This document shows, in pieces, positions 19,411 through 21,834 of a DNA stretch of 35,735 nt. Location of the stretch: assembly GCF_001194135.2 (NCBI RefSeq), contig NC_068982.1, forward strand, positions 74,640,934 through 74,676,668. The letters run 5' to 3'. The translations under genes were made by a program, and so were the position numbers. Each line of letters opens with the position of its first letter. Position 1 is the first letter of the stretch. Under the pieces are notes generated by a model. That model was not told the DNA's origin and ran no database searches. It was given only the letters and a program-made list of their open reading frames with translations. This DNA is from Octopus bimaculoides (taxonomy: Eukaryota).

Positions 19411-20909
19411 AATCAATTTTATTTTTAATAATTTAGTGTTAAATGAACATAATTCACAAACGTAAACAGTAAGGAAATGCCGATAAAAATCAGTTAACTA
19501 AGCTGAAATAGGAGCAAGCACATCAAACTAGAAGAAACTCTTAACTCCCCCCCCCCTCTCCGAAAGAAAGCTAGAGATATAGACAGATATATAGATATAC
19601 ATCAAGCCAGGATTTCTGTAAGCCTCTCCTCTCTCTCTCATGATAGACCAGTGTTTGTAGATATATATTTTTACATGCTCTAATAGAGTACATTTCAATA
19701 TTTCATTATATGTGTTCAAGTTTGGAATTTTTACAATTAAAATCTACTCGATGAAGTAGTGTAAATAATTATAGAAGTAGCGGCAGCTGTGACAGCCCAT
19801 ATTGTGATGGTATCCATTTTATGTAGTAGCAGTTACGTAAAAATCTACAGACACATTACTCCGAATACAATAATACTTGCTTTTTCTACTTCCTCCTACC
19901 CCCGAGCTATTTACAATCACATATTTTGAGCCAATGTAATCGTAAAACGACATGTGAACAAATGCGAAGACTATAGAGACAGTCAGTTGTACTTCCTGTT
20001 AGTCAAACTTACTGTATCCTGTTATAGCTTATTTATAAATGCATCGATGCCATAAATAACTGTCTGCCTGTCAACCTTTTATTTTATCTTTATTTTCATT
20101 AGCTTAACCGGTGAGCTTCCTATAGACAACTCTAGTTTACCAGGATTACAACGCCGATCATTATTAGGACGTTGGAATTTAGGTAACACTAATGTCTGTC
20201 TATACACGAACGTGTGCGCGCGCGCTACCCGTTATATTGGACGGATAACTTTGAAAGTATGGCATACATCGAATAAATAAAGTTTAACATTTTTTAATAA
20301 AAATTTTCGGTATTTATACAAAATGATGAAATGAATACAAATTTTCAAAAAATATATTTTATTACCTTCAAATAGAATTCAATAAAGCAAGTAAAATTTC
20401 GAAACAAAATTATCCATTACGGATCTCCGTGTTGATTTTATTATAACGGTTCAAAAACACCATTTCTCCTCCTTTTTCTCTGTCGCTCTAATTCTTTCTC
20501 AGTGTTCATGTTACTCATTGCCTGTCATGCACTTATCCTGCACCTCCTATGTTAACTCCCTGCATCTTTTTTTACTCCGTCTGTATCTCTCTTTCACACT
20601 CTCCCCCTCTCTCTATACATTGTAAAGCGTGACTAGAAAAATCAACCAACCAACCAACATTTATATTGGTTATTATTAGAGATTAAATACATATAAAATA
20701 TTACATAAACAATAATTAAAATATATCCGCCACTGAGTGTAGCTTCTGTAATTCACTAGCAACGAAATGGAAACAGTTCGAATTTGAAATTAATATCGGT
20801 TCGATGTTACCATAAATCTAATAATTTCCTTTGTTCTTTTGTATCTTGCTAGCGGTTTCTTTTCAGTATATAATGTATAATTAAATTACTTCGAAAGTGC
20901 TAAATTTTG

Positions 20910-21665
20910 ATGCACATGGAAGATCGTATTGAAAGAAAACGGCGATTGGCACGGGAGAGGAAGGCGAGGCAAAGAATACGAGAACGAGAAGCACGAAAAC
21001 TAGCAAGGTGTCATTCAGATTTTTCAAATATACAACAGGTAAATCAAAGACAAACAGAGGTAAAAGTTATCAGTCGCAGAGAAATTGCCCGACTTCGAAC
21101 AGCAGAAAGAAGGCGAAGATTATCACAAGAAGAACTCAATGCTCGGCGTGAATTGGAGAGGCGGAGGAGTGCGGCGAAACGACAACTCGAAACGCAAGAA
21201 CAAAAACAAGCAAGACTCGAAAAAGAAAGAATAAGATTAAGTAAGAAAAGACAAAATGAAACACAACAGGAAAGAAAAGCTAGATTGGAGAAAGAAAGGA
21301 TAAGAATGATTGTGAAAAGACAAAAGGGGACACAGGAAGAAAGAAAGGCGAGAGTCGAAAAACAAAGAAAGCGATTCATTACACCAAGGCATCAAAATGA
21401 AAGTGTAGAGGATGAACAACGAAAGTTACTTGGGAATATATATGGGGTTCTGGCAACCGAAGAAAATGAAGAACATGGGACCAATGAAAGACAAAGCAAT
21501 GCAACAGTTCAAAGCAACAGAGTCGACAACAATAGTTTTCATGAAGAAAGTTTACTGCGTCATTCATGTAGGTCTCTGATATCTTATAGCACCAAATATT
21601 CTTCATCAGAACGTCCTTCAGATGATAGATTGAGTAACAGCTGCCACGAAGGTAAACAATTTTGA
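20910..21665 (+). CDS. Putative STPR-repeat protein (251 aa) derived from a Helitron Rep/Hel N-terminus; domesticated gene or young remnant
   Basis: Uninterrupted ORF from ATG 20910 to TGA 21663-21665. It has five 23-aa repeats (QTEVK.., LSQEE.., ETQEQ.., ETQQE.., GTQEE..) and a C-terminal SFHEES..HSC..ERPSD..SCHEGK resembling the Helitron HxC/CxxC..ERPSDGKF..CC.KGK motif. A polypyrimidine tract with AG at 20851-52 and 20865-66 lies upstream. Confidence 0.6.
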   Translation: MHMEDRIERKRRLARERKARQRIREREARKLARCHSDFSNIQQVNQRQTEVKVISRREIARLRTAERRRRLSQEELNARRELERRRSAAKRQLETQEQKQARLEKERIRLSKKRQNETQQERKARLEKERIRMIVKRQKGTQEERKARVEKQRKRFITPRHQNESVEDEQRKLLGNIYGVLATEENEEHGTNERQSNATVQSNRVDNNSFHEESLLRHSCRSLISYSTKYSSSERPSDDRLSNSCHEGKQF

Positions 21666-21834
21666 CTGCATAATTTACTCCATACTCCAAAAAAAAAAAA
21701 AACCTCCTGTTATGACGGGTAATATTCTTAAATATATTTAGAGCAAAGTTGTCGAATATGTACGTAAACAATGATCTCTGGTACAAAACGAATGGAACTA
21801 TATACTTACATAATACTTATATAATACTTATATA

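What the first reader, a model, noticed from the sequence alone, without database searches (positions are those of the whole stretch)
20830..21780. Candidate domesticated Helitron-derived STPR DNA-binding gene
Seen: an open 251-codon ORF with five tandem 23-aa repeats (21051-21398; consensus about ETxEERxARLExERxRxxxxRQx) and a C-terminal SFHEESLLRHSC..ERPSD..SCHEGK block. Beyond the stop, remnants (PY..LxMTGN..EYVRK) continue in broken frames. A strong polypyrimidine tract with two AGs lies 43-57 nt before the ATG. Known: 23-aa STPR repeats form the DNA-binding domain of silkworm FMBP-1, similar repeats precede the zinc motif in many animal Helitron Rep/Hel proteins, and that motif needs several Cys. 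Inference: most Cys ligands are lost and the downstream Helitron is decayed, yet the STPR module is intact while nearly all other TE coding fragments here carry stops or frameshifts. This fits purifying selection on a co-opted, single-coding-exon STPR protein. Caveat: the T-poor strand avoids stops more easily by chance.
Basis: partly seen in the sequence, partly recalled or inferred. Interest (0 to 1): 0.78.

Follow-up and report, generated by a model that had tools for sequence, protein, structure and literature searches.

The report
Stand-alone divergent STPR-repeat ORF
A real, intact 251-codon reading frame encodes a divergent member of the STPR family of DNA-binding repeat proteins, of the subtype mostly seen on Helitron transposases. 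No Helitron remains lie next to it, and nothing available here shows that the host has adopted it.

Summary
The ORF at 20910-21665 (+) is real and is not a composition artefact. No dinucleotide shuffle out of 20000 stays open, and the other five frames carry 6-17 stops. It contains five tandem 23-residue repeats (21051-21395) with a sharp lag-23 signal.

It fails Pfam's STPRs threshold (10-12 bits against 27). A profile built from 14 Pfam-certified STPR relatives, without the window sequence, scores it 75.7 bits (shuffles reach at most -5.6). The joint profile hits only FMBP-1 in the PDB (E = 6e-13). So it is an STPR protein, closest to the subtype found at Helitron N-termini: 14 of its 27 relatives carry Helitron hallmarks.

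- The C-terminal "zinc-motif relic" and the post-stop "remnants" score no better than shuffles against a Helitron N-terminal profile.
- No Rep or helicase domain lies on that strand in the 14 kb downstream.
- The "T-poor" caveat points the wrong way, because about 12 stops are expected.

The 89-codon tail has no homologue and is predicted disordered, yet it is open far beyond chance. The ORF therefore looks like a discrete coding unit. Domestication could not be tested: no cephalopod genomes or RNA-seq were available, and about 15 billion predicted proteins contain no close homologue. Interest is modest.

The parts
20910..21665 (+). Intact ORF of 251 codons plus the TGA stop. A database gene model (P0001, 249 aa) starts at the second ATG, 20916.
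   Evidence: 0 of 20000 shuffles open; P0001 in UniRef/MetaClust, a single-member 90% cluster
20919..20987 (+). N-terminal basic helix (aa 4-26, EDRIERKRRLARERKARQRIRER) with an STPR-like E..ER..RL..R pattern. Not significant on its own.
   Evidence: profile domain 1, -2.3 bits; helix, pLDDT above 95
21051..21188 (+). STPR repeats 1 and 2 (aa 48-70 and 71-93). They are divergent: T/S2 and R9 are kept, E1 is lost.
   Evidence: profile domain aa 48-110, 29.6 bits
21189..21395 (+). STPR repeats 3-5 (aa 94-116, 117-139, 140-162), the best-preserved core. The pattern is E/G-T-x-E-x-R/K-x-A-R-L/V-E-K-x-R-x-R-...-R.
   Evidence: 69-nt period; aa 84-171, 59.1 bits; Pfam STPRs is the top family, but only 10.5-12.4 bits; dN/dS of 0.21-0.22 for the two pairs, R3-R4 and R3-R5, where dS is not saturated
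21396..21662 (+). Orphan acidic, Ser-rich tail (aa 163-251). Its first 23 residues are a degenerate sixth unit (NESVEDEQRKLL..). It has no homologue and is predicted disordered, but is open beyond chance.
   Evidence: 58 of 20000 shuffles open; no homologue or family; pLDDT below 50, apart from a short helix at aa 167-185; no Helitron Zn motif
20826..20866 (+). Polypyrimidine tract with two AGs, a candidate 3' splice site that would place the first exon base at 20853 or 20867. Function untested.
   Evidence: (such sites occur 0.74 per kb per strand)
20867..20874 (+). TATATAAT, a TATA-box-like motif 36-43 nt before the ATG. It offers an alternative reading of the upstream region. Untested.
   Evidence: read from the sequence only
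21689..21702 (+). A14 run 24 nt after the stop codon. It could be a retrocopy poly(A) tail or a plain homopolymer.
19991..20001 (+). ACTTCCTGTTA, which matches ACCTCCTGTTA at 21702-21712 directly after the A-run (10 of 11). A weak candidate target-site duplication.
   Evidence: D9; 10 of 300 shuffles as good

Best explanation
The ORF is a discrete, stand-alone coding unit for a small STPR-repeat protein. It has a long basic helix (aa 3-156) carrying at least five 23-residue STPR units, followed by an 89-residue disordered acidic, Ser-rich tail.

Its repeats belong to the 'E-T-x-E-x-R-x-x-R-L-E-x-x-R-x-R-x-x-x-x-R' subtype. That subtype sits mostly at the N-terminus of animal Helitron Rep/Hel proteins, so a transposon (Helitron-type) ancestry is the most likely origin. 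At this locus nothing else of a Helitron is present.

I judge it most likely a low-copy, lineage-restricted, TE-derived ORF whose intactness reflects recent origin or residual constraint, not demonstrated co-option by the host.

If translated, it would work like FMBP-1. Each repeat would fold into a helix lying in the DNA major groove and cover about 4 bp, so five repeats would cover about 20 bp of preferentially AT-rich DNA. In a Helitron such a module would plausibly tether Rep/Hel to AT-rich target DNA.

Shown here: the ORF, the repeats, STPR homology and the absence of Helitron domains. Inferred: TE ancestry, DNA binding and youth.
For: - The ORF and each half of it are open far beyond chance: 0 of 20000 shuffles for the whole, 19 of 20000 for the STPR part and 58 of 20000 for the tail. 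Stops are dense just outside it.
- STPR homology: phmmer against 1.84 billion representatives finds 27 relatives, the best at E = 4e-12, and all align in 23-aa register.
- Seven of the 10 relatives scanned pass Pfam's STPRs cut-off, at 43-80 bits.
- A profile built without the window scores the ORF 75.7 bits, against a maximum of -5.6 for 1000 composition-matched shuffles.
- Profile A1 hits only FMBP-1 (5d23) in the PDB, at E = 5.8e-13.
- 14 of the 27 relatives carry a Helitron hallmark, either an MPPKR-type leader or the Zn-motif profile. P0005 carries STPRs plus Helitron_like_N. HELIANO reports STPRs as a recurrent HLE1 domain (PMC11417382).
- Synonymous differences between repeats are near saturation while non-synonymous ones are not (pS 0.55-0.98 against pN 0.18-0.41). 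The array therefore has a long history as protein-coding sequence.
- There is no close paralogue or orthologue in about 15 billion predicted proteins and only one STPR locus in the window. That argues for low copy number and against a conserved annotated gene.
- An intact frame needs less than about 3-7% neutral divergence. The octopus Helitron burst is dated at JC 0.09, about 25 My (PMC13282606).
- A 5'-truncated LINE tail in the same window also stays open for 139-160 codons. Open TE fragments therefore occur here without domestication.
Against: - A young TE-borne ORF should have sister copies, and none is seen among annotated proteins. Repeat masking before annotation could hide them, and the genome itself could not be searched.
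- The orphan tail being open (P about 0.003) and the sharp ORF boundaries fit a selected gene at least as well.
- Pfam's own STPRs model does not reach threshold.
- The Helitron ancestry rests on who the nearest relatives are. Those relatives are at most about 43% identical, none is a mollusc, and 13 of 27 show no Helitron hallmark.
- Several FMBP-1 DNA-contact positions (Tyr16, Met13, Ser14, Ala17) are not conserved, so the binding mode and specificity are extrapolated.
Confidence: 0.5

Rival explanations
1. The ORF is a host gene co-opted from a transposon STPR module, kept by purifying selection and expressed as a single-coding-exon DNA-binding factor, possibly with a 5'UTR intron ending at 20852 or 20866.
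For: - The 251-codon frame is intact despite a stop-prone codon make-up: 6% of all point changes would create a stop.
- The orphan tail is also open, with 58 of 20000 shuffles as good, and the ORF boundaries are sharp.
- No transposase domains are attached.
- It is a single locus with no paralogues in protein databases.
- It was called as a gene model by an annotation pipeline.
- An acceptor-like tract lies upstream.
Against: - No orthologue appears in any annotated proteome among about 15 billion proteins. An octopod orthologue separated by 13-33 My should be more than 85% identical and easily found if it were annotated.
- No expression, synteny or dN/dS data could be obtained.
- The acceptor motif is expected by chance about 7% of the time.
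- Both ATGs have a weak Kozak context, read from the sequence.
Confidence: 0.3
2. A processed retrocopy. An mRNA encoding an STPR protein was reverse-transcribed and inserted as 20002-21702, ending in an A14 tail and flanked by an 11-bp target-site duplication.
For: - An A14 run lies 24 nt after the stop.
- ACTTCCTGTTA (19991-20001) matches ACCTCCTGTTA directly after the A-run, and only 10 of 300 shuffles give 10 of 11 or better.
- The coding sequence is intronless.
Against: - There is no AATAAA or ATTAAA between the stop and the A-run.
- The implied 900-nt 5'UTR is AT-rich and contains the very polypyrimidine-AG sites that splicing should have removed.
- The shuffle P of about 0.03 was obtained after scanning many offsets.
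- No parent gene is found in protein databases.
Confidence: 0.08
3. An in-situ decayed Helitron. The ORF is the surviving N-terminus of a Rep/Hel gene whose zinc motif (the C-terminal block) and downstream parts have decayed in place.
For: - STPR arrays are followed within about 10 residues by the Cys motif in intact Helitron proteins.
- By eye, a few letters line up (SFH/AFH, CHEGK/CVGGK, VRK/IRK).
Against: - The Helitron N-terminal profile gives -0.7, -1.7 and -0.8 bits for the tail, the post-stop frame and the frameshift-corrected join. 256-270 of 500 shuffles do as well, and there is no hit in any of six frames.
- The same profile recovers diverged or decayed motifs elsewhere at 14.6-88.6 bits.
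- No Helitron_like_N or PIF1 signal is found on the + strand from 21.5 to 35.7 kb.
- A fragment young enough to keep 251 codons open should still have a recognisable neighbouring Zn motif and Rep domain.
Confidence: 0.05
4. A chance ORF in low-complexity purine-rich DNA.
For: - The composition is rich in E, R and K.
- Pfam gives no hit above threshold.
Against: - 0 of 20000 shuffles are open.
- The ORF scores 75.7 bits against an independent STPR profile, while composition-matched shuffles reach at most -5.6.
- pS is far above pN between repeats.
Confidence: 0.01

Closest known systems
FMBP-1 STPR domain of Bombyx mori (PDB 5d23, 5d2q, 5d2s; Pfam PF21107 STPRs), together with its animal relatives such as ZNF821
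   Same: - Tandem units of exactly 23 residues.
- T/S at position 2 and Arg at position 9 in all five units. Glu1 is present in two units, a basic residue at position 6 in three, and Leu/Val10 in three.
- An all-helical prediction.
- FMBP-1 is the only PDB hit of the family profile, at E = 5.8e-13 (PMC4856987).
- Like FMBP-1, it is a small protein made of an STPR array plus an acidic region.
   Different: - It scores below Pfam's threshold (10-12 bits against 27).
- The second half of each unit reads x-R-x-R-x-x-x-x-R instead of M-S-x-Y-A-A-x-R-L. The DNA-contacting Tyr16 and the hydrophobic pocket of Met13, Ser14 and Ala17 are therefore absent.
- The array is N-terminal and the acidic tail C-terminal, the reverse of FMBP-1.
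- There is no C2H2 finger as in ZNF821.
N-terminal STPR arrays of animal Helitron (HLE1) Rep/Hel proteins, for example P0005, P0015, P0017 and the spider, insect and mite proteins
   Same: - The same repeat subtype (ETxEQRxARLExxRxRxAxxR).
- These are the nearest relatives by sequence.
- STPRs are reported as a stably carried HLE1 domain (PMC11417382).
   Different: - There is no MPPKR-type leader.
- There is no Cys motif, no Helitron_like_N and no PIF1 after the array.
- An unrelated 89-residue tail and a stop codon follow instead.
- Identity to any relative is at most about 43%, and none of the ten relatives whose source was looked up is a mollusc.
Short 'STPR domain-containing' predicted proteins of other invertebrates, for example P0002 (Ancylostoma), P0009 (Graphocephala), P0008 and P0024
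   Same: - They are 180-380 residues long.
- They consist of an STPR array plus a non-conserved tail.
- They are uncharacterised.
   Different: - Their tails are unrelated to this one.
- Several keep the Helitron leader.
- Their own status, gene or transposon fragment, is unknown.

Membership tests
STPR domain (Pfam PF21107; FMBP-1 type) | Tandem repeats of exactly 23 residues | tested here: met
   A 69-nt period. Identity at lag 23 is 0.33, against 0.16 or less at other lags. The alignment with 14 STPR proteins is gapless and in register.
STPR domain (Pfam PF21107; FMBP-1 type) | Conserved Glu1, Thr/Ser2 and Arg9 in each repeat (PMC4856987) | tested here: inconclusive
   T/S2 and R9 are present in all five units. 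Glu1 is present only in units 3 and 4; the others have Q, L and G.
STPR domain (Pfam PF21107; FMBP-1 type) | Score above Pfam's gathering threshold (27 bits) | tested here: not met
   The whole ORF gives no hit at E up to 10. The repeat core alone gives 10.5-12.4 bits at E 0.2-0.85, with STPRs as the top family.
STPR domain (Pfam PF21107; FMBP-1 type) | Significant sequence similarity to certified members | tested here: met
   27 relatives at E below 1e-3 in 1.84 billion representatives, the best at 4e-12. Seven of the 10 scanned pass Pfam STPRs. A profile built without the window scores 75.7 bits, against -5.6 or less for shuffles. The joint profile against the PDB finds FMBP-1 only, at 5.8e-13.
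STPR domain (Pfam PF21107; FMBP-1 type) | FMBP-1 DNA-contact residues (Arg6, Arg9, Leu10, Tyr16, Arg20; Met13/Ser14/Ala17/Leu21) | tested here: not met
   R/K6, R9 and L/V10 are kept in units 3-5. Position 16 is Arg, not Tyr, and positions 13, 14 and 17 are E/Q, R and L/M/F. The Helitron-type relatives share this departure.
STPR domain (Pfam PF21107; FMBP-1 type) | Binds AT-rich DNA along the major groove | not testable with these tools
   Only a single-sequence AlphaFold2 model is available. It shows one helix at aa 3-156 with pLDDT above 95 and a disordered tail.
Helitron (HLE1) Rep/Hel protein or its relic | Cys-rich motif directly after the STPR array (..C..C..CC..GK..PP..L....IRKYNS.FQMTSFG) | tested here: not met
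   A profile of 23 sequences gives no hit in six frames. The tail scores -0.7 bits and the frameshift-corrected join -0.8 bits, and 256-270 of 500 shuffles do as well. The profile detects diverged cases at 15-89 bits.
Helitron (HLE1) Rep/Hel protein or its relic | Rep (Helitron_like_N) and PIF1-type helicase domains | tested here: not met
   Pfam finds nothing in the + frames of 21500-25300 or in the open + strand stretches from 25.3 kb to the end. tblastn of 146 proteins gives only noise and a SINE artefact. The minus strand was tested by tblastn only.
Helitron (HLE1) Rep/Hel protein or its relic | Helitron termini (5'-TC, 3' hairpin plus CTRR, insertion at an AT dinucleotide) | not tested
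   The ends cannot be recognised without other copies of the element.
Domesticated transposon gene | Single-copy syntenic orthologues in related species, with dN/dS below 1 | not testable with these tools
   No cephalopod genome is reachable. There is no annotated orthologue among about 15 billion proteins, no contig on record and nothing in metagenome contigs.
Domesticated transposon gene | Transcription and translation from the host locus | not testable with these tools
   No RNA-seq is available. A predicted gene model exists in UniRef, but its evidence is unknown.
Processed retrocopy | Poly(A) tail and flanking target-site duplication | tested here: inconclusive
   An A14 run at 21689-21702. 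A 10-of-11 direct repeat at 19991 and 21702, matched or beaten by 10 of 300 shuffles. No polyadenylation signal lies before the A-run.

The most novel reading that the evidence does not exclude
A lineage-specific DNA-binding factor (apparently in an octopod) was built from a Helitron STPR module fused to a new disordered acidic tail, and is maintained by host selection. This would be a transposon-derived transcription-factor-like gene that Pfam-based annotation misses.
Probability: 0.27. Interest if true: 0.55.

Novelty: new member of a known kind. Interest (0 to 1): 0.3.

Why it matters
- If the host really uses it, this would be a documented case of a Helitron DNA-binding module turned into a stand-alone regulator, in a lineage whose regulatory novelty and transposon load are of current interest.
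- It would give a small, easily expressed protein for testing how the Helitron-type STPR variant (Arg at position 16 instead of Tyr) reads DNA.
- As things stand, it mainly shows two things. Divergent STPR arrays escape Pfam's threshold, and an intact transposon-type ORF cannot be called domesticated from one locus.

Tried and rejected
- Pfam on the whole ORF gave no family. On the repeat core alone, STPRs came top but far below threshold.
- Direct phmmer against the PDB put FMBP-1 on top at only E = 3.8. A family profile was needed.
- The word-indexed search of 5.8 billion proteins found only the ORF itself.
- Exact-product look-ups for the 249-, 251- and 252-aa versions found nothing on record.
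- The metagenome contig scan found nothing.
- My own by-eye alignment of the tail and the post-stop frames to the Helitron Cys motif looked suggestive (SFH/AFH, CHEGK/CVGGK, SK..VRK/SK..IRK). I rejected it because the profile scores equal those of shuffles.
- A tblastn hit of Helitron proteins at 8333-8471 (-) (E = 0.005) proved to be a translated SINE.
- The tail against P0003, the one relative whose alignment ran into the tail, was not significant.
- The single-sequence AlphaFold2 model is one long helix plus disorder. I did not run a fold search on it because a lone helix gives meaningless matches.
- The last large protein search went on a LINE fragment, to learn the source organism and the database's coverage. 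It returned only distant mollusc and flatworm relatives. The database therefore does not hold unannotated ORFs of this genome, and the 'no paralogue' argument applies to annotated proteins only.
- The organism was not identified by any tool.
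Full report
**Observation**

The window is a gap-rich eukaryotic scaffold with ten N-runs of 100-910 nt, full of SINE copies and microsatellites. At 20910-21665 on the + strand there is an ATG-to-TGA frame of 251 codons.

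The opposite holds. The stretch is 43% A, the two other sense frames carry 11 and 17 stops, and the antisense frames carry 12, 7 and 6. None of 20000 dinucleotide-preserving shuffles is open, with a mean of 12 stops. Taken separately, the repeat half is open in 19 of 20000 shuffles and the non-repeat tail in 58 of 20000. Stops are dense immediately outside the frame: three in the 25 codons upstream and four in the 50 codons downstream. The ORF is therefore a discrete unit, not a lucky gap.

The five 23-residue repeats lie at 21051-21395 (aa 48-162):
- TRF and the repeat finder see the 69-nt period.
- Protein self-identity peaks at lag 23: 0.33, against 0.05-0.16 at all other lags from 15 to 31.
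- Between repeats, synonymous differences are near saturation (pS 0.55-0.98) while non-synonymous ones are not (pN 0.18-0.41). For the two pairs where dS could be estimated (R3-R4 and R3-R5), dN/dS is 0.21-0.22.

The array is thus old and evolved as protein, not as a recent DNA satellite.

Comparable acceptor-like sites occur 0.74 times per kb per strand in this window, so the motif is only weakly informative. A TATATAAT at 20867-20874 offers an alternative reading of the same region.

**Is it STPR?**

Pfam gives no hit for the whole ORF. For the repeat core alone, STPRs (PF21107) is the top family at only 10.5-12.4 bits against a 27-bit cut-off. By Pfam's own rule it is not a member.

An exhaustive phmmer search of 1.84 billion representatives found 27 relatives at E below 1e-3, the best at 4e-12 and 41% identity. 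All match only aa 50-160 or so, and all are in 23-residue register. Of ten relatives scanned, seven pass Pfam STPRs at 43-80 bits. One of those also carries Helitron_like_N and another an MBD domain; one of the three that miss the cut-off has a sub-threshold DUF6570 match.

A profile built from 14 of these relatives, without the window sequence, scores the ORF 75.7 bits (aa 48-110 at 29.6 bits, aa 84-171 at 59.1 bits). One thousand composition-matched shuffles of aa 1-165 reach at most -5.6 bits. The joint profile finds exactly one protein in the PDB, the FMBP-1 STPR domain, at E = 5.8e-13. The direct comparison had already put it on top, at a non-significant E = 3.8.

The published signature is Glu1, Thr/Ser2 and Arg9 (PMC4856987). 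Thr/Ser2 and Arg9 are present in all five units, and Glu1 in two. The second half of each unit (x-R-x-R-x-x-x-x-R) differs from FMBP-1's M-S-x-Y-A-A-x-R-L and matches the relatives instead. Conclusion: this is a genuine but divergent STPR array that the Pfam model misses.

**Is it Helitron-derived, and is a decayed Helitron attached?**

The general premise is right. In spider, insect and mite proteins, STPR arrays run straight into the Helitron Cys motif and Helitron_like_N. HELIANO lists STPRs among the domains stably carried by HLE1 elements. Fourteen of the 27 relatives carry a Helitron hallmark, either an MPPKR-type leader or a Zn-motif profile hit. A transposon ancestry of this repeat subtype is therefore plausible.

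- I built a 135-position profile of the region from the last repeat through the Cys motif to the start of Rep, from 23 proteins.
- It finds nothing in any of the six frames of the window.
- It scores the tail at -0.7 bits, the post-stop frame at -1.7 bits and a frameshift-corrected join at -0.8 bits, and 256-270 of 500 shuffles do as well.
- The same profile still recognises divergent or visibly decayed motifs in other proteins at 14.6-88.6 bits.
- Pfam finds no family in the three + frames of 21500-25300, nor in the open + strand stretches from 25.3 kb to the end.
- tblastn with 146 STPR and Helitron proteins finds only noise. One apparent hit at 8333-8471 is a translated SINE.
- Only one STPR locus exists in the window.

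A fragment young enough to keep 251 stop-prone codons open would have less than about 3-7% neutral divergence. It should still have a recognisable neighbouring Zn motif and Rep domain, and it has neither. The "in-situ decayed Helitron" picture is rejected.

**The tail**

Residues 163-251 have no homologue in any search and are predicted disordered. AlphaFold2 gives one confident helix at aa 3-156 and pLDDT below 50 for most of the tail. The frame is nevertheless open well beyond chance. This is the one point that remains unexplained. It suggests the natural product is "STPR array plus novel tail" ending at the present stop.

**Gene, or young transposon ORF?**

The protein is already in UniRef/MetaClust as a 249-residue model starting at the second ATG. 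It is a single-member cluster at 90% identity, and nothing else is closer than about 43%. Exact look-ups in assembled public runs and a metagenome scan found nothing.

The absence of paralogues argues against a high-copy family. The absence of an orthologue in any annotated proteome argues against a conserved, expressed gene. Octopus species 13-33 My apart should share more than 85% identity even without constraint. Both arguments apply to annotated proteins only, because the database does not hold unannotated ORFs of this genome.

Other transposon fragments in the window can also stay open. A 5'-truncated RTE-like tail is open for 139-160 codons. An A14 run 24 nt after the stop, together with a 10-of-11 direct repeat at 19991 and 21702, hints at a retro-insertion. 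The evidence is weak: 10 of 300 shuffles do as well, and there is no polyadenylation signal.

My weighting is:
- stand-alone transposon-derived ORF, young or residually constrained: 0.5
- host-selected, domesticated gene: 0.3
- retrocopy: 0.08
- in-situ decayed Helitron: 0.05
- chance ORF: 0.01

**Mechanism**

By analogy with the FMBP-1-DNA structures, each 23-residue unit would form a helix in the major groove and cover 4 bp. The main contacts would be phosphate contacts from the conserved arginines, and binding would favour AT-rich DNA with a wide major groove. Five units would cover about 20 bp. In a Helitron this would plausibly tether Rep/Hel to AT-rich targets. Both steps are inference. 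The replacement of Tyr16 and of the hydrophobic pocket means that specificity may differ.

**Verdict**

The STPR call is right, although it needs a family profile rather than Pfam. The Helitron link is plausible only at the level of the repeat subtype. The claimed Helitron relics are not there, and domestication is untested. This is a new, divergent member of a known kind, of modest interest until copy number, synteny and expression are checked.

Noticed in passing
21835-22200 (+); also 12906-13198 (-), 8114-8484 (-), 15597-15895 (-), 23711-23880 (-), 18116-18280 (+), 225-527 (+): One SINE family of about 365 nt is scattered through the window at 64-86% mutual identity. A copy sits 170 nt after the ORF's stop. 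Its translation (..GSGF.PT..GQV...IASG.PKPCE..) produces spurious tblastn hits to Helitron proteins. ARAGORN finds no tRNA gene in the window.
   Followed up: partly
9827-10306 (-): A 5'-truncated RTE-like LINE 3' end whose C-terminal reading frame is still open for 139-160 codons. Its relatives carry PF20049. The best relative is only 56% identical, and the named ones come from molluscs and Schistosoma. It serves as a control showing that transposon fragments here can stay open.
   Followed up: partly
about 25600-26300 (-): By eye only, this is the C-terminus of a mariner/Tc1-type transposase (..WSPNSPYCNALDYYVWGAVE, then EINKTPCNIKDELKARI..). It is split by a stop between two stretches of one reading frame. 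It was not checked with an HMM.
   Followed up: no
33065-33217 (-), about 33900-34125 (-), 27452-27592 (-): By eye only, reverse-transcriptase motifs (VGIHQGAVLS, YLAFIGLKKSF, RLRWYGHLARM) in separate broken frames. They are probably decayed LINEs.
   Followed up: no
21044-21379 (-): A 111-codon antisense ORF overlaps the STPR repeats. It is Leu/Ser/Phe/Cys-rich and is a by-product of the purine-rich sense strand, not an independent gene candidate.
   Followed up: partly
21802-21834 (+): (ATACTTATATA)x3 abuts the 5' end of the downstream SINE.
   Followed up: no
26700-27560 (both strands): Overlapping ORFs of 100-137 codons on both strands, in a region of 42-48% GC, the highest in the window. 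No Pfam family was found for the + strand stretches.
   Followed up: partly
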